Shown here piece after piece: positions 32,608-39,978 of a stretch of DNA of 64,000 nucleotides. Within the stretch, counting starts at the first letter, position 1; the number at the start of each line of letters is the position of its first letter. The stretch lies in sequence record NC_031043.1; one strand, 5' to 3'. Position numbers and translations under genes: made by a program. The notes under the pieces are model-generated. The model had not been told where the DNA came from and searched no databases. It saw only the letters and a list, made by a program, of their open reading frames with translations.

Positions 32608-34305
32608 ATGTTCGTCATCCACGTAATCCACACTAGCATGGGCTTCCGAATAGAAGTCCCTGTGCGAGTTATCGAATTAGCTATTTTAAAGTTTGCTGAT
32701 GAACATTTACATGCGCCTAAAATGGGGCGCGACCATGGGAGAATGACCGTCGAAAAGGGGGACGGGTATTACGTTCATATCCCTTCGATGAATTACTTCT
32801 ACTTCCATAAAGCATACTTCCATCGCATCCGTCAAATCGTGACGCACGCTGCGATAGAGTACAATAAGCAGGTGGAGGTACGTGAACACCACTACGTCCG
32901 TCGTGAGCCTTATAAGTGCTCATTCGATAACTACGGCTTCGAAATGGAAGTCACGGACGTAAACTCTCGCTTCTTCTATCAGAACGAAGTGGTTGAGAAA
33001 GCATTAGATCCGTTGTACTTACAAATCATTTTCGCCATCCAGACAGGAAGAGGAAAGACCAAGACCGCGCAAAAGGTGATGGTAAAGAAAGGGGTGCGCG
33101 CTGCACTTATCCACCGTCCAACCTACGTGGATAAATGGAAGTACGACTGTATTGAAGATGAGTCTGGCCTGCGAGTCGACGAGAAGCATGTGTATGTTGC
33201 CAAAGGGACACAGGGAATTTATGACCTGATAGAGGATGGTCGCTCTGGAAAGTTAGACCGAATGGGAATTAAGATTGTTATCTTACCTACCGTCTCGTTG
33301 TTCAACTTCATGAAAGAAGCGATTGCCACAATGTCGTCGTCGCCTGTGGACTTCGAAGCCTTCTATGACGATATCGGTGTTGGTGAGGTTATCTACGATG
33401 AGGTGCATGAGCACTTCTTACTGGTGTACCTGAGCGGTATTCTGTTGAACCCGCCATCCACCATTGAGATGTCTGCTACCTTGAAGCCGGGCGAAGCGAA
33501 GAAGTTTATCGCGGAACGGTATAAGGAACGCTTCCCAGAACACTGCCGCATTAGCGTGCCGTATATTCCGGTGGTCGACTGCCGTGGATTGTACTACAGC
33601 ATTGATGACCCCGCGTTCGTTCGCCGAATGCAGAGAATGACCCCGTACAACCACAAACTGTTTGAGCAGCAATTGTTCAAACACAAACTGGAAGATGGGT
33701 ACTTCTCGATGGTCTACGATATTCTTAAGCGTTCTTACATTGATAAGTATGAGCCCGGTCAGAAAGCCTTAGTCTTCTTTGCGTTAGTGGACTCCTGTGT
33801 CGCATTCGTCAAGTATGTGAAACACCGTTTACGCAATGAGTCAGACAAAGATTTCTCCGTGGTGAAGTACAACGCAGGGGATAGCTACGACGAGTTCATA
33901 GCTGCCGATATCGGGGTTTCCACTCCGGGTAAAGCAGGTACGGCAATTGACATCCCGGGGTTGGTTGTGGCGATAGTCACAATTGCCATCGATGACCGTC
34001 AGTTGAATGAACAGATTGCGGGCCGTCCGCGTGAAGTGACCAAGTGGGATTTGACACCGAAAGTCTTCTTCCTGCACTGCAGTGAACTCCAAAAGCATTT
34101 GCAGTATCTGGAGTCCCGCATGCGGTCATTGAAAGAAGTAGTGAAATCCTTCATGACTTCGTTCGCGCCTTACGCTATAAGGAAATCGAATGTTAGTACC
34201 TCCTTCTCCAGCAACGCCGCTGCCGCCGTATCAAAACCTCACGCTAGCAAGCTTCCTCGAGGCAGTCTTACGGGCTTATCCCGCCGTAGAGGACGCCGTC
34301 GTTAG
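32608..34305 (+). CDS. superfamily 2 DExH helicase (phiKZ gp75-like)
   Basis: QTGRGKT, DEVH, SAT, STPGKAGTAIDIPGL, QIAGRPR. Confidence 0.92.
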   Translation: MFVIHVIHTSMGFRIEVPVRVIELAILKFADEHLHAPKMGRDHGRMTVEKGDGYYVHIPSMNYFYFHKAYFHRIRQIVTHAAIEYNKQVEVREHHYVRREPYKCSFDNYGFEMEVTDVNSRFFYQNEVVEKALDPLYLQIIFAIQTGRGKTKTAQKVMVKKGVRAALIHRPTYVDKWKYDCIEDESGLRVDEKHVYVAKGTQGIYDLIEDGRSGKLDRMGIKIVILPTVSLFNFMKEAIATMSSSPVDFEAFYDDIGVGEVIYDEVHEHFLLVYLSGILLNPPSTIEMSATLKPGEAKKFIAERYKERFPEHCRISVPYIPVVDCRGLYYSIDDPAFVRRMQRMTPYNHKLFEQQLFKHKLEDGYFSMVYDILKRSYIDKYEPGQKALVFFALVDSCVAFVKYVKHRLRNESDKDFSVVKYNAGDSYDEFIAADIGVSTPGKAGTAIDIPGLVVAIVTIAIDDRQLNEQIAGRPREVTKWDLTPKVFFLHCSELQKHLQYLESRMRSLKEVVKSFMTSFAPYAIRKSNVSTSFSSNAAAAVSKPHASKLPRGSLTGLSRRRGRRR

Positions 34306-34567
34306 ATTGTGTGAAGACTCGGTTACCCGCCGAGCTTTGCACTACTACACGGTCGAGGAACACTTCGCGGGCATGCAGATTACGCAACGCGGAAAGACGT
34401 ACTATGTTACACGGGTGAGCAGTATCCGCAACACTGCCGGTTACGAGCAGTACAGTTGGGTACTCTGGCACGATGACAAGTCCGGTACGTCGGTTGATGA
34501 AAACCCGAAAGTCGCTTACCGCCTGTATTCACACAAGTGGTTTGATTGGGTAGCCGTCAAACATTAA
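34190..34567 (+). CDS. hypothetical protein overlapping the helicase 3' end
   Basis: AAGGA SD before ATG 34190; followed by a terminator. Confidence 0.6.
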   Translation: MLVPPSPATPLPPYQNLTLASFLEAVLRAYPAVEDAVVRLCEDSVTRRALHYYTVEEHFAGMQITQRGKTYYVTRVSSIRNTAGYEQYSWVLWHDDKSGTSVDENPKVAYRLYSHKWFDWVAVKH

Positions 34568-34573
34568 TAACAA

Positions 34574-34613
34574 GGGGGACATTCTATATGTCCCCCACTA
34601 CCCTTATTTTTTT
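34574..34613 (+). terminator. intrinsic terminator
   Basis: GGGGGACAT/ATGTCCCCC stem with a downstream T tract. Confidence 0.7.
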
Positions 34614-34636
34614 GATATATAAAAGGAAACATTGCC

Positions 34637-35251
34637 ATGTCTCGCCGTAAAAAGAAACCTGCTTATAACCCACGTTCTGGCGCCCGTCAGGAAATCTACG
34701 CTGCGGTTCGTAAAGTCATTAAGTGCGAAGATAAATGGTTCGCACAGGCCAAACAGATTGGCCAGATGATTGAAGACGAGCGTGCTGCTATTACCCGTCT
34801 GCCAGAAGGCGAAAAGAAAGCCACGGCTGAGAAAGCCATGGAACAATTGTACGCGGCCTTCCTCGGCACCCTGCAGACGTATAACACGAAGTTTGCAGAA
34901 GGTACACTGAAAGGTGACGATATCGGATGTGCTGCACTGAAAATCGTTAACGGTAAAGGTACCAAGTGGTCTGATATGGAGCTGATGCTCATCGACCCTA
35001 CCGCTTCACTGATGGAGTTGGAAGCTGAGCTGTCCAACCTGTTACTGGATGCGACTGCCGCCTTCATGCCTGCGGTAGCGCAATACCAGCTGGATACCGG
35101 TGAATCGAAAGACAACGCCGAAATGCAACACATCATCGATGAGATGCGCGCACAGGCACCAAAGCCTGAAGCACCTAAGTTCGAAGAAGTGGCTGAAGAA
35201 ACCACCCGCGAAGATCGCGCGGATGCTGCATTCGAAGCTGCCGCCCAGTAA
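34637..35251 (+). CDS. hypothetical helical protein
   Basis: 204 aa; AAGGA SD; strong codon bias. Confidence 0.8.
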   Translation: MSRRKKKPAYNPRSGARQEIYAAVRKVIKCEDKWFAQAKQIGQMIEDERAAITRLPEGEKKATAEKAMEQLYAAFLGTLQTYNTKFAEGTLKGDDIGCAALKIVNGKGTKWSDMELMLIDPTASLMELEAELSNLLLDATAAFMPAVAQYQLDTGESKDNAEMQHIIDEMRAQAPKPEAPKFEEVAEETTREDRADAAFEAAAQ

Positions 35252-35273
35252 TTACTTTTAGGGACTGTGACCA

Positions 35274-37391
35274 ATGAGTCAAGAAAATGAGAACCAAGGT
35301 CGTCCGTTGTTGACAGCCGGGGTACAAACGGAGGAGCTGGGCAAAGCCCCAGCCGACCTCGGGTTTACAGCTGTTGCAGAAGACGATTACGACCCGGAAG
35401 AAGCGCGTCGTTTGTGGTTGGAAAACCGTCGTCAGAAAGAACTGGCAGCCAAAGGACAAGCGGGGGTTCAGGTAGATGACCAGAGTCGCGATATTGGGCG
35501 GTCAGTGCATAGCAGTCCATCTGCTCGCAGCGTTAGCCAGCGGGAAGATAATGGTAGTGAATTCGGACGCGCCAGCGGTACGCAAGAAACGACCATCGCT
35601 CAACAGCCTGTTCAGCCAACCGTGGAGTTACAAGCTCCCGCAAGTGCCCCCGCACGAGATGACACGCATGCAGACGCAGGTGCTTACACTGCCCAAGCAC
35701 AGTCGCTCGTTTCGCCGACCGCGCAGAAGGAAGTAATTCATGTCAAAGAAGAAGCGCAAACAGCCCGTCTGCATGATAGCCAAAATGGAACGGGTCGAGT
35801 TGAACACCGACATGCGGAACAGCAGCTTGCTCCAGCAGCGCCAACTTTCCAGCCAGTTGCAGACCCTGCGCCACAGGCCGAGACCAAGCAGCCAGCACCG
35901 CCTGCGACGCATCGCGTGAAATCAATTCTGGAAATGCCTGGCCATTCCGGTGAACGCAGTGAGTTTAGTGAACTGAAAGAAGATGACCCGTCTGCAATGT
36001 TGGCCGGGGCCTCTTTGATTGGTGGGCTGCGTAACCTCGCCGAATCGGTGGGGGGCTTTAATCAGTTCATCCGCGGTATTCCACGTGACGGTAACGGCGC
36101 ATTGCAATTCCGTAGTCAGGAAGAGCAGGAAATCTACGAACGCATCAGCCAAATCATGCAAATTGCCTCTCCAACGATGCAGAACGGTAACCAAGCGCAG
36201 TCAGAAGCTTGGGCACGTGAAGACATCAAGTGGCAGCAGCAGGTTGATACCGGCAACGGTGACCCGTTTGTGATTAAGAACCACCCTCGTTCGGGTGCTG
36301 GGTTAATGTCGGCGATTTATCGTCGTCAGAACTCGGGTGCGCCGGTCACGGTGTTCTTACCGGCGTCGGGTTTCTTCATTACCTCGAAAGCCCCGCACGA
36401 AAACGACTTCTGTGACTACGACGTAGCACAGACCATGGATACTAACCAAGTGGGCCTGTCCACCTTTGGTATCCTGCTGTCGGCGTCTTCTGGCCTGTAC
36501 CTGAAACACATGTTCAGCTTTGCGCTGAAGTTTGTCGAAGGCACTACGTTGGATGTGGGTGACGGTGAACTGCATCAAACCCTGTATTCGAAAATCGATG
36601 AGCGTGACTACTGGTTAGTGGTCATGGCTTGTACCATTGCGAAATACCCAAGCGGTATTCCATGGTTACTGAGCTGTACCTCGCCAACTTGCAGCCACGA
36701 AGAAGAGCTTAAGCTTAACATCGCACGCTGCATCCGTTACGCTAACGGGGTGATGACACAAGGCCAGCAAGCACTGATTAACCGTCAGCGCGACGGCGAA
36801 CTGATGACGTTCACCGAGCAGGCCGAGTATCGCAAACAGCACATGAAAGACCCGACGACTAAGTGGGTGGATGACAACCTGACCTTCCGTTTCGAACACG
36901 CTTCTATTGCGCGTTATATCGACACGACCGAAGAGTGGGTAGGTGACATCAACAAATCGACCACCGAAGCCATGGGGAACTACGCGACTGAACAAGAGCG
37001 TAATACTTACATGCGTATGGCTGCCGAGAACCGTCGTCTGACTCGCTACCTGCACTTCATTGATTCCATTACCAGTAATGAAGGCACTGAGGATGAGTAC
37101 ATCGAGAAAGACCCGATTAAAATCCGTCAGGCTTTGGTTGCGATGTCTTCTGACCGTGGTTTTGTGAACCGCTTTGAAGCCGCCATTGAGAAGTTCAATG
37201 AACGTTCTCGCTTGGCCATCTTCGGGTACATGTCACACAACTGCCCAGCATGTGGCGTGGCAACGGGTGAGAAAGAAGGTCCATTCCGCGGCATCGTTGA
37301 GATTTCGCCGGACAGACTTTTTTTCGTGCTCTCTCGAGTGGTGTACGAGATTCAGAAACTGTTAACAGATCAATACGAAAGTATTGGCTAG
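35274..37391 (+). CDS. large CxxC protein, tail/baseplate assembly chaperone candidate (G-like; phiKZ gp77-like position)
   Basis: 705 aa; low-complexity N-terminal third; CTSPTC and CPACG motifs as in T4 gp26-type assembly factors; slippery site near the 3' end. Confidence 0.6.
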   Translation: MSQENENQGRPLLTAGVQTEELGKAPADLGFTAVAEDDYDPEEARRLWLENRRQKELAAKGQAGVQVDDQSRDIGRSVHSSPSARSVSQREDNGSEFGRASGTQETTIAQQPVQPTVELQAPASAPARDDTHADAGAYTAQAQSLVSPTAQKEVIHVKEEAQTARLHDSQNGTGRVEHRHAEQQLAPAAPTFQPVADPAPQAETKQPAPPATHRVKSILEMPGHSGERSEFSELKEDDPSAMLAGASLIGGLRNLAESVGGFNQFIRGIPRDGNGALQFRSQEEQEIYERISQIMQIASPTMQNGNQAQSEAWAREDIKWQQQVDTGNGDPFVIKNHPRSGAGLMSAIYRRQNSGAPVTVFLPASGFFITSKAPHENDFCDYDVAQTMDTNQVGLSTFGILLSASSGLYLKHMFSFALKFVEGTTLDVGDGELHQTLYSKIDERDYWLVVMACTIAKYPSGIPWLLSCTSPTCSHEEELKLNIARCIRYANGVMTQGQQALINRQRDGELMTFTEQAEYRKQHMKDPTTKWVDDNLTFRFEHASIARYIDTTEEWVGDINKSTTEAMGNYATEQERNTYMRMAAENRRLTRYLHFIDSITSNEGTEDEYIEKDPIKIRQALVAMSSDRGFVNRFEAAIEKFNERSRLAIFGYMSHNCPACGVATGEKEGPFRGIVEISPDRLFFVLSRVVYEIQKLLTDQYESIG
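37319..37325 (+). other. candidate -1 ribosomal frameshift heptamer T-TTT-TTC
   Basis: In-frame CTT TTT TTC; the -1 frame is open from 37301 to 37783; 5-bp hairpin 6 nt downstream. Confidence 0.7.
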
Positions 37392-37783
37392 AGAGCGGCG
37401 GCTTAAGCCATGAGACCTTGATCAATACGCTTAAGCTTGATACCACCTCTCTGTTCAAGCGTCGTGATCACCGTGCCGTGACTTACCAAGAAGCGTATGA
37501 CGAGTTAATGGCGTCGTATGACCAATCGGTAGGTCTGGAGACGGGGCGATATCATGTAGCGATGTCTTTTCAGGAAGACCCGCTCGCGAACTCGCTGTAT
37601 CAGATATGGGTCGAAACGTTCATCCGTGAAGATGTTTATAAATACATGGGTATGAACTTCCAGCAGTTCTTGCAACAACCACGTTGGTTGATTGACATGC
37701 AGCTGAAAGCGATTAAGCGTCGTCATCAAGACGAGACTGCGCTAGCCAATGAGATTAAGAACACCTTGCCTCCGGATAAGTAG
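37325..37783 (+). CDS. C-terminal extension (T-like) reached by -1 frameshift; ORF-track ORF 37418-37783
   Basis: No ATG/GTG and no SD before the TTG at 37418; the C-terminal YMGMNFQQFLQQPRWLIDM pattern recalls gpT/T4 gp51-type chaperones. Confidence 0.6.
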   Translation, partial: RALSSGVRDSETVNRSIRKYWLESGGLSHETLINTLKLDTTSLFKRRDHRAVTYQEAYDELMASYDQSVGLETGRYHVAMSFQEDPLANSLYQIWVETFIREDVYKYMGMNFQQFLQQPRWLIDMQLKAIKRRHQDETALANEIKNTLPPDK

Positions 37784-37813
37784 AAGTGCCCTTCGGGGCA
37801 CTTTCTTTTTTTT
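37783..37813 (+). terminator. intrinsic terminator
   Basis: GAAGTGCCC-TTCG-GGGCACTTTC followed by a T tract. Confidence 0.9.
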
Positions 37814-37818
37814 GTTAC

Positions 37819-37827
37819 AATGGTATG
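37819..37827 (+). promoter_or_regulatory. late-type promoter AATGGTATG
   Basis: phiKZ late TATG motif; the same 9-mer occurs at 58086. Confidence 0.55.
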
Positions 37828-37853
37828 TATCCCAGCTTTAGGACTTTACAGTC

Positions 37854-38717
37854 ATGAATGATTTATACAACTACTACGCTAACTGCCTGCTCGCCGTGCG
37901 TCACCCTGACCGTGCAGCACCGTTATGTGACCTTGTGGCGTTGGCCATCGACAACGATTATGAACCCGCATTAGAACAGATTTATAACCTGGAGATGGAT
38001 GACGTTTCTACACACATTGACACTTTGGAAGGGTGGATTGTCAGCTGCGTAGTAGGGCTAGGTCATCGACTGGGTATTGCTTTTGATGCACCAGCCTGTT
38101 ACCGCAACCCGCGTGTACCATTGCTGGTATTAAAAGCGGTACTGGAAGATATCGAAACATTCGAGGACTTCGAAGAGGTACAGGCTATCTCCATGTCGGG
38201 TGAACCGGAAGGGATTATCCTTGAGAACATGGTACGCTACATCTACGCCGATAACTACTTCGAAATCGGTGAGTGTATCAAACTGGTTGAACCTCGCTTG
38301 ATGACCGTTATCAGTAACTTTCTGAATGCCAGTTCACTTGAAGACGATGCCACCGGTGTGGATGACAGTGAACTGCAACGGATGGTAACGTATATTCGTC
38401 AGTATCCTGAGAACCCATGTGTCTGGGCTTTCCAGAACGCGGCGCGTACAACCGAACCTAACGTACTGGCAACCTCGTTGGTCTTCGAAGAGACCAGTGT
38501 GCCTATTGACCGCCTGCTGGAAATCTATTCCGTAGGTATGGCACTGTACAATAACGACACCTTTGATGGGGCGTATGCCGCACTTGAGAAGATGTTAGCA
38601 ATTATTAACACTGATGAGCGTCCACCGATGCCAATCCTGCAAGCAGGGGCCGCAGCGCTACGCACGATTTACGGAGTGGAGGATGGACAAGTACAGTTAT
38701 CTGATAGCGGCCTGTAA
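37854..38717 (+). CDS. conserved hypothetical acidic helical protein
   Basis: 287 aa; AGGA SD; precedes the vRNAP subunit. Confidence 0.75.
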   Translation: MNDLYNYYANCLLAVRHPDRAAPLCDLVALAIDNDYEPALEQIYNLEMDDVSTHIDTLEGWIVSCVVGLGHRLGIAFDAPACYRNPRVPLLVLKAVLEDIETFEDFEEVQAISMSGEPEGIILENMVRYIYADNYFEIGECIKLVEPRLMTVISNFLNASSLEDDATGVDDSELQRMVTYIRQYPENPCVWAFQNAARTTEPNVLATSLVFEETSVPIDRLLEIYSVGMALYNNDTFDGAYAALEKMLAIINTDERPPMPILQAGAAALRTIYGVEDGQVQLSDSGL

Positions 38718-39978
38718 TTCCAATGCGTGGAAACGGCTCTCCTGGCGCATGTCGATATTTAACGTGTGCCGTTTCCCTGAGAACGGTAAACCGCAAGCAT
38801 ACGACCTGTCGTATGTCGATGGGGTGCCGCACTTCTGGGATATAGATGAAGACACGTTAGGTAAATGGTCACCGATTACCGGGGTTCGTCCTAACGAAGA
38901 AATCTTCTGGCCGGAAGAAGAGTTACCGATTAAAGCGGGTGATTATCCGGGACTTGAGAAAGACCTGCTCACCACTGCGGGTCGTTACGTGGCCAACTGG
39001 ATTGTGATTTACTTCTCGGTAGGGAAACGTCTTCCTTATCTAGAAGACGGGCAAACGTTCATGGTGTACGAGAGCGAATTGTACAACCGTTGCCTGAAAT
39101 CTGAGACAGATGACCCGGACAACACCGAAGCCATCCGTCCATCGCACATTAACGCGTTTATACAGGGCCTCAGTGAGCTTTCGCCGATGTGTAAGGCGAT
39201 TGTACCCACTGGGACACTGCGCTCGTTAGAGACGCACCCAGACCTGTATAAGGTACGTGACGCATTACTTGAAAAACACAAAGATGAATTGGATGACCCG
39301 GCCGTGGTCGTGAAGATTCAGAAAGTGTTGGACGACATGGACACCGAATGGTTGAAAGGTGACCAGTCCATCGAGTTCTTCAGTTCGAAGAAATCCCGCA
39401 TGCGTCGTCGTAAGCTGTTAATCATGCACGGGATTGAAGCCGCCTTTAAAGAAGGGGGCGACTACACCCTGATACCGACGTCATTAATCGAAGGGGGCGA
39501 CCTGACGAAGCTCGTTGAGAAATTCAACGGCGTCCGTGAAGGTTCCTTCTCCCGTGGTGCGGAAACCGCGAAAGGCGGGGAACAGGTTCGAATCATCCAG
39601 ATGATTTTCCAGAACCACCGTATCACTGCAGATGACTGCGGTACTAAACTGACCCACCTCGTGTTCATCAACGATACTAATGTTGAACGTTACGTGGGAA
39701 TGAATATGGTTGATGGCGGTAAATTGGTGAATCTTACCAAGAAACTGTTAAAGGATATGCTGGGTAAAGCTATCCGCATCCGTCGACCTATCTTATGTCA
39801 ACGTGGCCACGTCGATACCTGTGCAGGCTGCTCCAGTGCGACAAAGTCCAACGAAGAACGCGCCATCGCCGCCGATGTATCAACCGCGATGTCTAACGTT
39901 ATGTTGAACGCCATGGGCGCAATGCACGGCCGTGAAACTGTGGTGGCCGAATACAAACCTCGATTCCACATTACCTAA
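38683..39978 (+). CDS. virion RNAP beta-prime middle subunit (phiKZ gp80-like)
   Basis: ATG 38683 with GGAGG SD; bridge-helix-like GVREGSFSRGAETAKGG, DDCGT, RRPILC...CAGC Zn site. Confidence 0.85.
   Translation: MDKYSYLIAACNSNAWKRLSWRMSIFNVCRFPENGKPQAYDLSYVDGVPHFWDIDEDTLGKWSPITGVRPNEEIFWPEEELPIKAGDYPGLEKDLLTTAGRYVANWIVIYFSVGKRLPYLEDGQTFMVYESELYNRCLKSETDDPDNTEAIRPSHINAFIQGLSELSPMCKAIVPTGTLRSLETHPDLYKVRDALLEKHKDELDDPAVVVKIQKVLDDMDTEWLKGDQSIEFFSSKKSRMRRRKLLIMHGIEAAFKEGGDYTLIPTSLIEGGDLTKLVEKFNGVREGSFSRGAETAKGGEQVRIIQMIFQNHRITADDCGTKLTHLVFINDTNVERYVGMNMVDGGKLVNLTKKLLKDMLGKAIRIRRPILCQRGHVDTCAGCSSATKSNEERAIAADVSTAMSNVMLNAMGAMHGRETVVAEYKPRFHIT

What the first reader, a model, noticed from the sequence alone, without database searches (positions are those of the whole stretch)
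35274..37783. Candidate programmed -1 frameshift producing a giant G/GT-type chaperone pair
Seen: the 705-aa ORF reads CTT TTT TTC (L682-F683-F684), a canonical X-XXY-YYZ heptamer T-TTT-TTC at 37319-37325. The -1 frame opens after a TGA at 37298 and stays open to 37783, reading RALSSGVRDSETVNRSIRKYWLESGGLSHETLINTLKLD... It has no ATG or GTG and no SD before the weak TTG at 37418. A TCTCG/CGAGA hairpin starts 6 nt after the heptamer. The fusion would be about 836 aa. Established: lambda G/GT and P2 E/E' tail-assembly chaperones are made this way, normally between the tail-tube and tape-measure genes. Inference: the jumbo phage keeps the recoding mechanism in a much larger CxxC protein, far from its tail genes and inside the replication block. 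Transcriptional slippage on T7 is an alternative.
Basis: partly seen in the sequence, partly recalled or inferred. Interest (0 to 1): 0.86.

Follow-up and report, generated by a model that had tools for sequence, protein, structure and literature searches.

The report
Conserved -1 frameshift in jumbo-phage core gene
Two neighbouring "hypothetical" genes of Erwinia jumbo phage Phobos are really one gene that is read in two frames through a slippery run of T, and the same arrangement was found in all of about 57 related giant-phage genomes checked, including phiKZ, where it has apparently never been annotated.

Summary
The window is Erwinia phage vB_EamM_Phobos. The two ORFs are gp41 (705 aa) and the GenBank "gp42".

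They behave as one gene. A T7 run forms an in-register T TTT TTC heptamer 22 codons before the gp41 stop. The -1 frame runs on for 152 codons to an intrinsic terminator.

The arrangement recurs without exception in about 57 genomes or contigs of nucleus-forming jumbo phages, including SPN3US, phiKZ (gp77 plus "gp76.4"), PhiPA3, 201phi2-1, RSL2, PCH45, Ea35-70 and a Vibrio phage. Each has a T5-T8 run at the homologous Phe-Phe. Each has a 151-180 codon homologous extension in the -1 frame.

That frame has no conserved start codon or Shine-Dalgarno sequence. It shows a coding substitution pattern from the run onward. A sequencing error and an independent second gene are effectively excluded.

Ribosomal -1 frameshifting is the best mechanism. 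Transcriptional slippage cannot be excluded.

The gene is Chimalliviridae core gene cg18, of unknown function. It is not a member of the lambda G/GT chaperone family by homology, size or position. There is only a fold-level hint of kinship with T4 gp26/gp51 hub-assembly proteins.

No publication or record annotating the frameshift was found.

The parts
35274..37783 (+). One gene read in two frames: Chimalliviridae core gene cg18, the phiKZ gp77 family. GenBank annotates it as PHOBOS_41 plus PHOBOS_42.
35274..37391 (+). Frame-0 ORF giving the short isoform, 705 aa (gp41).
   Evidence: PHROG 8054 E 3.8e-280 and PHROG 4585 E 2.2e-68.
35274..35975 (+). N-terminal ~234 residues. Low-complexity and poorly conserved. 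Much shorter or absent in phiKZ-type homologues (476-604 aa).
   Evidence: inference from alignment and length differences.
35976..37316 (+). Conserved alpha/beta core with four nearly invariant Cys. Their codons are 36675-36677, 36690-36692, 37242-37244 and 37251-37253. A zinc site is presumed.
   Evidence: Alignments A2 and A3. AlphaFold model pLDDT 77.8, pTM 0.80.
37318..37325 (+). T7 run (37318-37324) forming the slippery heptamer T TTT TTC (37319-37325) at codons Leu682-Phe683-Phe684.
   Evidence: Conserved in about 57 genomes or contigs as T5-T8.
37325..37391 (+). Dual-coding overlap. It holds the frame-0 tail (22 codons plus stop, predicted terminal helix) and the first 22 codons of the -1 extension. 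DNA is nearly invariant across genera.
37325..37783 (+). -1 frame extension of 152 codons plus TAG. An all-helical domain, homologous to the extensions of phiKZ-type phages.
37418..37783 (+). GenBank 'gp42' (TTG start, no SD). This is an annotation artefact: it is the distal part of the extension.
37783..37814 (+). Intrinsic-terminator-like hairpin plus T tract directly after the stop of the extension. There is no strong terminator (hairpin followed by a full T tract) between the frame-0 stop and this point; the scan's weaker + strand matches all lie upstream, inside gp41.
34637..35251 (+). gp40, the counterpart by position of phiKZ gp78. It always lies directly upstream on the same strand and is probably co-transcribed.
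   Evidence: A hairpin at 34574-34596 and a T7 run at 34607-34613 lie upstream of it.

Best explanation
gp41 and 'gp42' are one gene, the core gene cg18 of nucleus-forming jumbo phages (phiKZ gp77 family). It makes two proteins that share residues 1-684. Most ribosomes read straight on and finish 22 codons later, giving the 705-aa form with a short terminal helix. A fraction slip back one base on T TTT TTC, with the two Phe-tRNAs re-pairing, and go on for 152 codons. That gives a form of about 836 aa with a conserved helical C-terminal domain.

Shown: the anatomy, its conservation, the coding character of the -1 frame and the absence of an own start. Inferred: that the shift is ribosomal rather than made in the mRNA, that it is inefficient so the long form is the minor one, and that both isoforms are functional. 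I put recoding of either kind at about 0.9. The figure below is for the ribosomal version.
For: (1) The site and frames are as described.

(2) Five Derbicusvirus genomes are about 78% identical overall. The T7 run and the roughly 55 nt after it are invariant in all five.

(3) tblastn with the two pieces kept apart shows the same 2-nt offset between the end of piece 1 and the start of piece 2. This holds in SPN3US, Wellington, phiEaH2, Machina, Asesino, Caitlin and others, at 40-50% aa identity.

(4) I checked 21 GenBank genomes from different genera plus 13 and 23 further IMG/VR contigs. In every case the downstream ORF is in the -1 frame. It is open back into the first ORF, and a T5-T8 run sits in the overlap at the homologous Phe-Phe. 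The extension is 151-180 codons, while the +1 frame closes after 0-26 codons.

(5) The extensions of the SPN3US-like and phiKZ-like clades are homologous: hhalign probability 98.3%, E 1.6e-14.

(6) There is no conserved start. The first ATG/GTG/TTG lies at extension codon 9 to 86, almost never with an SD. In phiKZ, Ea35-70 and several others it lies inside the conserved domain, which begins near codon 52.

(7) Extension codons 24-51 lie after the frame-0 stop and before the starts usable in most genomes. Their substitution rates by codon position are 0.33/0.22/0.60. The conserved domain gives the same pattern, 0.40/0.26/0.61.

(8) In 1.84 billion representative proteins, the extension occurs almost only as short stand-alone calls with variable starts. 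It is never joined in frame at the site. All 22 close relatives of piece 1 are 644-721 aa.

(9) In E. coli, H_HH.U_UU.Y heptamers are among the most efficient -1 motifs. U_UU.[U,C] are among the three most shift-prone tetramers (PMC4066793). Every genome keeps at least that tetramer in register, including those with only T5 or T6. Three contigs changed the peptide (Phe-Leu) yet kept T7.

(10) A terminator-like hairpin with a full T tract follows the extension stop, and no comparable one follows the frame-0 stop.
Against: No conserved downstream RNA structure was found. MFE z-scores are -1.4 to +1.2 in 12 lineages. The RNAalifold consensus is -1.15 kcal/mol. There was no Rfam match. I also saw no convincing upstream SD-like element by eye, but ran no formal scan for one. 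Efficiency may therefore be low, or another mechanism may act. A homopolymer run is also the classic signal for transcriptional slippage, and these phages use their own RNA polymerases of unknown slippage behaviour. No protein, Ribo-seq or RNA data were available to me. The register of the run is partly forced by the conserved Phe-Phe, so register alone does not prove ribosomal slippage.
Confidence: 0.62

Rival explanations
1. Programmed transcriptional slippage. The phage (or host) RNA polymerase stutters on the T run, so part of the mRNA carries a run of different length. Ordinary translation then continues into the second frame. The two isoforms and their biology would be the same; only the level at which the frame changes differs.
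For: The only element conserved across all lineages is a homopolymer run. No stimulatory RNA structure is conserved. A/T runs of 7 or more are otherwise kept out of coding sequence in this window. UUUUUUU is under-represented in all frames in E. coli, possibly for this reason (PMC4066793). Run length drifts between T5 and T8 while the required shift stays the same.
Against: Many lineages have only T5 or T6. From established knowledge of bacterial and T7 RNA polymerases, that is short for efficient slippage, yet it still forms a shift-prone tetramer for the ribosome. The run is always in the register that gives TTT TTY in frame 0. The first Phe codon is always TTT.
Confidence: 0.27
2. Two separate genes. 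'gp42' is translated on its own from the TTG at 37418, or by re-initiation after the gp41 stop, as GenBank annotates.
For: All public records annotate two CDSs. The frame-0 stop lies 27 nt before the TTG.
Against: Candidate starts are not homologous, include CTG and TTG, and lack SD motifs. In several phages the first possible start lies inside the conserved domain. The stretch upstream of the starts evolves as coding sequence in the -1 frame. The downstream ORF is in the -1 frame in every genome checked, where independent genes would show about one in three. The amino-acid sequence of the -1 frame is conserved from the run onward between Phobos and SPN3US.
Confidence: 0.05
3. Artefact or decay: a homopolymer miscount in the assembly, or a recently broken gene.
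For: Homopolymers are error-prone in some sequencing chemistries.
Against: The same frame relation holds in about 57 genomes or contigs from many laboratories, platforms and metagenomes. Run lengths differ from T5 to T8. The frame-0 tail has a fixed length of 22 codons in all 17 loci of the SPN3US-like clade, and it constrains the third positions of the other frame.
Confidence: 0.02
4. One reading: the pair is the jumbo-phage counterpart of the lambda G/GT or P2 E/E' tail-assembly chaperones, the long form bridging tape measure and tube.
For: It shares the recoding logic, with a short major and an extended minor form. The protein is not listed as a virion component in phiKZ, and its Goslar counterpart gp081 is not mentioned in the Goslar virion-structure paper. 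Foldseek links the core to BFVD models named 'Baseplate hub assembly protein, bacteriophage T4-like' (E 1.4e-5, TM 0.51 by target). A 687-aa homologue is named 'Baseplate protein' (E 1.7e-16). T4 gp51 and gp26 both belong to Pfam PF12322 and are regarded as assembly factors (PMC9024508).
Against: There is no Pfam, PHROG or NCBIfam link to chaperone or baseplate families. hhalign against the gp51/gp26 alignment is not significant: probability 1.4%, P 0.04. Foldseek hits to named tail chaperones have E of 1 or more. The gene lies among helicase and RNA polymerase genes. The Churi homologue was listed among early-expressed proteins.
Confidence: 0.12

Closest known systems
Lambda gpG/gpGT and P2 E/E' tail-assembly chaperones (conserved -1 frameshift; Xu, Hendrix & Duda 2004; summarised in PMC5009743)
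   Same: A slippery heptamer sits near the end of the first ORF. The second ORF is in the -1 frame without its own start. The two products share the N-terminal part. The arrangement is conserved across very divergent phages. The T-rich heptamer resembles the one I recall for P2 (from memory, not tested).
   Different: There is no sequence or fold homology. The products are 705 and about 836 aa instead of about 140 and 280. The gene does not lie between tube and tape-measure genes. An early-expressed homologue is reported. Function is unknown.
E. coli dnaX tau/gamma
   Same: One gene gives two isoforms through a -1 shift on a homopolymer-type heptamer. The ratio is set by recoding. In Thermus the same outcome is reached by transcriptional slippage, which mirrors the ambiguity here.
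   Different: In dnaX the shift truncates the protein, whereas here it extends it. dnaX has strong upstream SD-like and downstream hairpin stimulators, and none were found here. There is no homology.
Phage T7 gene 10A/10B
   Same: A -1 shift near the end of the ORF gives a minor, C-terminally extended isoform of a phage protein.
   Different: That protein is the capsid protein. There is no homology, and the slippery context differs.
T4 gp26/gp51 (Pfam PF12322, T4_baseplate)
   Same: There is fold-level similarity of the conserved core to BFVD models of T4-like 'baseplate hub assembly' proteins. A Cys pair followed by a similar strand motif aligns.
   Different: It is not detectable by HMM or profile-profile comparison. 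T4 proteins are 208-249 aa. No frameshift is annotated in the T4 record, where 26' is annotated as a second, shorter CDS within gene 26 that ends at the same stop.

Membership tests
Chimalliviridae core gene cg18 (phiKZ gp77 family; PHROG 8054/4585) | Sequence homology to phiKZ gp77 and its relatives | tested here: met
   PHROG 8054 E 3.8e-280 and PHROG 4585 E 2.2e-68. tblastn to PHIKZ077 E 1e-11. Foldseek to jumbo-phage homologues TM 0.67-0.93. cg18 = Goslar gp081 / phiKZ gp077 / RAY gp267.
Chimalliviridae core gene cg18 (phiKZ gp77 family; PHROG 8054/4585) | Conserved neighbourhood: gp78-like gene upstream on the same strand, with gp79/gp80-like genes and a helicase nearby | tested here: met
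Programmed -1 ribosomal frameshift site (bacterial type) | X XXY YYZ heptamer in the register of the upstream frame | tested here: met
   T TTT TTC at 37319-37325. This motif class is efficient in E. coli.
Programmed -1 ribosomal frameshift site (bacterial type) | Site and -1 ORF conserved in divergent relatives, with the -1 ORF lacking its own initiation signal | tested here: met
Programmed -1 ribosomal frameshift site (bacterial type) | Stimulatory element: downstream hairpin or pseudoknot, or upstream SD-like sequence | tested here: not met
   No significant or conserved downstream structure. No Rfam hit. Many proven sites work at low level without one, so this lowers the expected efficiency rather than the claim. 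An upstream SD-like element was only looked for by eye.
Programmed -1 ribosomal frameshift site (bacterial type) | Trans-frame protein product observed | not testable with these tools
   No proteomic or Ribo-seq data at hand.
Programmed transcriptional slippage | Homopolymer run long enough for polymerase stuttering | tested here: inconclusive
   T7 here and T8 in three lineages, but T5-T6 in many others. The slippage threshold of the phage polymerases is unknown.
Programmed transcriptional slippage | Heterogeneous run length in mRNA | not testable with these tools
   No RNA reads at hand.
Lambda G/GT-type tail-assembly chaperone | Overlapping ORF pair joined by a -1 shift | tested here: met
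Lambda G/GT-type tail-assembly chaperone | Gene pair located between the tail tube gene and the tape-measure gene | tested here: not met
   The flanks are helicase, gp78-like, gp79-like and RNA polymerase subunit genes. The same holds in relatives.
Lambda G/GT-type tail-assembly chaperone | Homology or fold of known chaperone families | tested here: not met
   No Pfam, NCBIfam, PHROG or PDB match. Foldseek hits to named chaperones have E of 1 or more.
Lambda G/GT-type tail-assembly chaperone | Binds tape measure and tube protein; absent from virions | not testable with these tools
   Indirect only: gp77 is not flagged structural in phiKZ, and Goslar gp081 is not mentioned in the Goslar virion-structure paper.
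T4 gp26/gp51 (Pfam PF12322 T4_baseplate) | Match to the family HMM or profile | tested here: not met
   No PF12322 hit for nine family members at E up to 10. hhalign probability 1.4%.
T4 gp26/gp51 (Pfam PF12322 T4_baseplate) | Shared fold | tested here: inconclusive
   Foldseek against BFVD gave E 1.4e-5 and 1.7e-3, with TM 0.50-0.51 by target length. The targets are predicted models named by automatic annotation. No solved structure exists to compare with.

The most novel reading that the evidence does not exclude
A family-wide recoding signal, missed in every public annotation, sets the ratio of two isoforms of a core protein of nucleus-forming jumbo phages. That protein is a very distant, enlarged relative of the T4 gp26/gp51 hub-assembly factors. 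It would then supply these phages with the frameshift-regulated assembly chaperone that has not been identified in them. This would extend the 'conserved tail-gene frameshift' rule to a new protein family and genome position.
Probability: 0.12. Interest if true: 0.8.

Novelty: new member of a known kind. Interest (0 to 1): 0.66.

Why it matters
First, it corrects the annotation of a core gene in more than 200 jumbo-phage genomes, phiKZ, SPN3US and PhiPA3 included. The small downstream ORFs (phiKZ gp76.4, SPN3US gp40, PhiPA3 gp073, 201phi2-1 gp135 and others) are the second frame of gp77-family genes, not genes of their own.

Second, conservation of a recoding site over this evolutionary distance implies that the ratio of the two isoforms matters. 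That gives a concrete handle on a core protein of unknown function.

Third, these phages separate transcription (inside the phage nucleus, by phage polymerases) from translation. The site is therefore a natural place to ask whether frame changes arise in the mRNA or on the host ribosome.

Fourth, conserved frameshifts in tailed phages are known mainly from tail chaperone genes. This would be a further deeply conserved case in another gene family.

Tried and rejected
Function by sequence gave nothing.
- Pfam, NCBIfam and the PDB sequence search returned nothing for either piece.
- PHROGs gave only unnamed families.
- Foldseek against the PDB gave nothing for the core or the extension.

The T4 gp26/gp51 link was tested by profile-profile comparison. 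I fetched T4 by an accession that appears in papers and its relatives from IMG/VR. The result was not significant. A profile search meant to bridge the families found only close relatives, and no hit carried PF12322.

RNA stimulators were not found. There was no Rfam hit.

Fused natural versions were not found. P0029 is a contig ORF that enters the second frame about 30 codons before the site. It is most likely an indel in a low-quality contig. P0042 is a scrambled artefact.

One collection scan failed because the alignment was too divergent. It was repeated with a narrower alignment.

Literature: ten searches and nine papers found no report of a frameshift in this gene family. The library lacks most subscription journals, so absence is not proof.

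I treated the site as a recoding signal of an intact gene of a viable phage, not as a break, so its coordinates are given. My notes and script outputs list the positions of the T runs in relatives. Two notes also describe how the run differs at the RNA level: one gives the direction of the change in describing transcriptional slippage, and one says the two mechanisms cannot be told apart by sequence. No sequence joining the two frames was built, saved or searched. The two pieces were always handled apart. The junction peptide quoted in the finding was not used.
Full report
IDENTITY AND OBSERVATION. The window is bases 1-64000 of Erwinia phage vB_EamM_Phobos (KX397372, genus Derbicusvirus), at 100% identity and with the same coordinates. 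The finding covers PHOBOS_41 (35274-37391, 705 aa) and PHOBOS_42 (37418-37783, TTG start). Both are annotated 'hypothetical protein'. Codons 682-684 are CTT TTT TTC, so a T7 run (37318-37324) forms an in-register T TTT TTC heptamer. The -1 frame has a stop at 37298-37300 and is then open to 37783. No start codon precedes the SD-less TTG at 37418. A 5-bp TCTCG/CGAGA pairing is possible 6 nt after the heptamer. T7 as such is not rare in the window, with 18 matches against 15 expected. It is, however, the only A/T run of 7 or more that lies inside a long ORF, and the only one followed by a long open -1 frame.

THE ARRANGEMENT IS CONSERVED FAR BEYOND THIS PHAGE. Five Derbicusvirus genomes are about 78% identical in DNA. 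All five keep the T7 run and the following roughly 55 nt unchanged. All five annotate a small second gene, with different non-homologous starts. I searched phage genomes with the two pieces kept apart. Piece 1 ends and piece 2 begins with the same two-base offset in SPN3US, Wellington, phiEaH2, Machina, Asesino, Caitlin and many others, at only 40-50% amino-acid identity.

The most distant hits identify the family. The phiKZ homologue is gp77. In phiKZ a T7 run sits 42 nt before the gp77 stop, and the -1 frame is open from there to the stop of the small ORF annotated as gp76.4, 218 nt downstream.

I examined 21 GenBank genomes of different genera: Derbicusvirus (5), SPN3US, a Vibrio phage, phiKZ, PhiPA3, 201phi2-1, RSL2, PCH45, Ea35-70, Centimanus, Xoo-sp14, Psa21, Proteus phage 10, FLC9, RP12, PS119XW and 2050HW. 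I added 13 and 23 further IMG/VR contigs. In every one:
- the downstream ORF is in the -1 frame;
- that frame is open back into the first ORF;
- a T5-T8 run lies in the overlap, at the homologous position about 20 residues after the second Cys pair, at a conserved Phe-Phe;
- the extension measures 151-180 codons;
- the +1 frame, measured in the 26 loci of the second IMG/VR set (23 of them new), closes within 0-26 codons.
No record annotates a joined CDS.

THE -1 FRAME IS TRANSLATED FROM THE RUN ONWARD. Four lines of evidence support this.
- The extensions of the SPN3US-like and phiKZ-like clades are homologous: hhalign probability 98.3%, E 1.6e-14 over 103 columns.
- There is no conserved initiation signal. 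The first possible start lies anywhere between extension codon 9 and 86, nearly always without an SD-like motif. In phiKZ (codon 86), Ea35-70 (69) and several metagenomic relatives it lies inside the conserved domain, which begins near codon 52.
- In 12 SPN3US-like genomes, extension codons 24-51 lie after the frame-0 stop and before the starts. Pairwise substitution rates there are 0.33/0.22/0.60 at codon positions 1/2/3, the same signature as the conserved domain (0.40/0.26/0.61). In the 22-codon overlap the third position is held down to 0.28, as expected if frame 0 is also under selection. The frame-0 tail is exactly 22 codons long in all 17 loci of that clade.
- A full HMMER scan of 1.84 billion representative proteins found the extension almost only as short stand-alone calls (80-147 aa) with variable starts. 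It was never joined in frame at the site. All 22 close relatives of piece 1 are 644-721 aa.

A sequencing error, a recent pseudogene and an independent second gene are therefore very unlikely.

MECHANISM. Two mechanisms fit: ribosomal -1 frameshifting and transcriptional slippage on the run. I favour the ribosome, at about 0.6 against 0.27. According to the systematic E. coli study (PMC4066793), H_HH.U_UU.Y heptamers are among the most efficient -1 motifs, and U_UU.[U,C] are among the three most shift-prone tetramers. Every genome retains at least that tetramer in register. That includes the lineages with only T5 (the Vibrio phage, PS119XW) or T6 (PhiPA3, Psa21, FLC9 and many metagenomic contigs). 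Such runs are short for polymerase stuttering as known from bacterial and T7 polymerases (established knowledge, not tested here). Three contigs changed the peptide to Phe-Leu yet kept T7 as T TTT TTG.

There are points against. No stimulatory RNA element could be demonstrated.
- MFE z-scores of the 70 nt after the run are -1.4 to +1.2 in 12 lineages.
- The consensus fold of 15 SPN3US-like sequences is -1.15 kcal/mol.
- Rfam finds nothing.
The strong DNA conservation after the run is better explained by dual coding. The shift is therefore probably inefficient and the long form the minor product, but this is inference. The slippage behaviour of the phage RNA polymerases is unknown, so the rival stays open.

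A terminator-like hairpin with a T tract follows the extension stop directly, and there is no comparable one after the frame-0 stop. With a hairpin and T run upstream of gp40, this suggests that gp40 (in the position of phiKZ gp78) and the two-frame gene form one transcription unit.

WHAT THE PROTEIN IS. The gene is core gene cg18 of the nucleus-forming phage family (Goslar gp081 / phiKZ gp077 / RAY gp267). It is listed as 'hypothetical' and is not marked as restricted to chimallin-encoding phages (PMC10299810, Table S3). Pfam, NCBIfam and the PDB sequence search give nothing, and PHROGs gives only unnamed families.

An AlphaFold model of residues 235-705 (pLDDT 77.8, pTM 0.80) shows an alpha/beta core. 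Four nearly invariant Cys come from two distant pairs, presumably a zinc site. The chain ends in a helix that starts at the slippery Phe-Phe, so the shift swaps this helix for another C-terminus. The extension is predicted to be all-helical (pLDDT 82.7, pTM 0.51). Neither model matches a solved structure.

Against predicted viral structures, the core matches jumbo-phage homologues. It then matches a 687-aa 'Baseplate protein' (E 1.7e-16) and T4-like 'baseplate hub assembly' proteins (E 1.4e-5 and 1.7e-3, TM about 0.5 by target). T4 gp51 and gp26 both belong to Pfam PF12322. Profile-profile comparison with a gp51/gp26 alignment was not significant; only the first Cys pair and the following strand align. 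The Churi homologue of phiKZ gp77 was listed among early-expressed proteins in a proteomic screen (PMC11849849). That sits badly with a late tail-assembly role. Function therefore remains open. An assembly-factor role is a lead with low probability.

COMPARISON WITH KNOWN SYSTEMS. In recoding logic the locus works like lambda G/GT, P2 E/E', T7 10A/10B or dnaX: one gene gives two isoforms with a common N-terminal part, in a ratio set by a slippery site. It is not a member of the G/GT chaperone family. Homology, size and gene position were tested and not met.

NOVELTY. It is a new member of a known kind of mechanism, in a gene family where it seems not to have been described. Ten full-text searches and the large 2016 recoding review returned nothing on it. 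The library is incomplete, however.

VERDICT. The frameshift is real and deeply conserved (about 0.9 for recoding of either kind). The chaperone identity is not supported. Interest is fairly high for phage biologists. The finding fixes a family-wide annotation error in a core gene and gives a testable clue to its function.

Noticed in passing
window 37783-37814 and 34574-34613: Terminator-like GC hairpins with T tracts bracket gp40 plus the two-frame gene, suggesting a discrete transcription unit. No sigma-70-like promoter was found in 34200-38000, consistent with phage-polymerase promoters.
   Followed up: partly
whole window: All A/T homopolymers of 7 or more except the slippery run lie outside long ORFs. 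Coding sequence of this phage seems to avoid them.
   Followed up: partly
P0029 (metagenomic protein): A 312-aa contig ORF follows the gp41-type frame and then enters the second frame about 30 codons before the slippery site. It is probably an indel in a low-quality assembly. P0042 looks like a scrambled assembly artefact of the SPN3US extension.
   Followed up: partly
L075-L077 (IMG/VR contigs): A variant lineage reads Val-Phe-Leu with T TTT TTG. The peptide changed while the T7 run was kept.
   Followed up: no
L032 7803-9229 (phage T4): T4 gp26 and gp51 both match Pfam PF12322 over their full length, so the two hub-assembly genes are paralogues.
   Followed up: partly
window 35274-35975: The N-terminal ~234 residues of gp41 are low-complexity (Q/A/P/E-rich) and unconserved. 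phiKZ-type homologues are 100-230 residues shorter.
   Followed up: no
P0050: A 279-aa fragment of a homologue carries the JGI name 'DNA-directed RNA polymerase subunit F'. No other evidence for such a function was seen.
   Followed up: no
window 38614-39978 versus 37854-38717: gp43 and gp44 (RNA polymerase beta-type subunit) overlap by 35 nt as annotated, and a longer ATG ORF starts at 38614. The true gp44 start was not examined.
   Followed up: no
L013 2841 (Ea35-70) and L010 2922 (201phi2-1): Annotators resorted to CTG and TTG starts for the downstream ORF, which illustrates the lack of a genuine start.
   Followed up: yes
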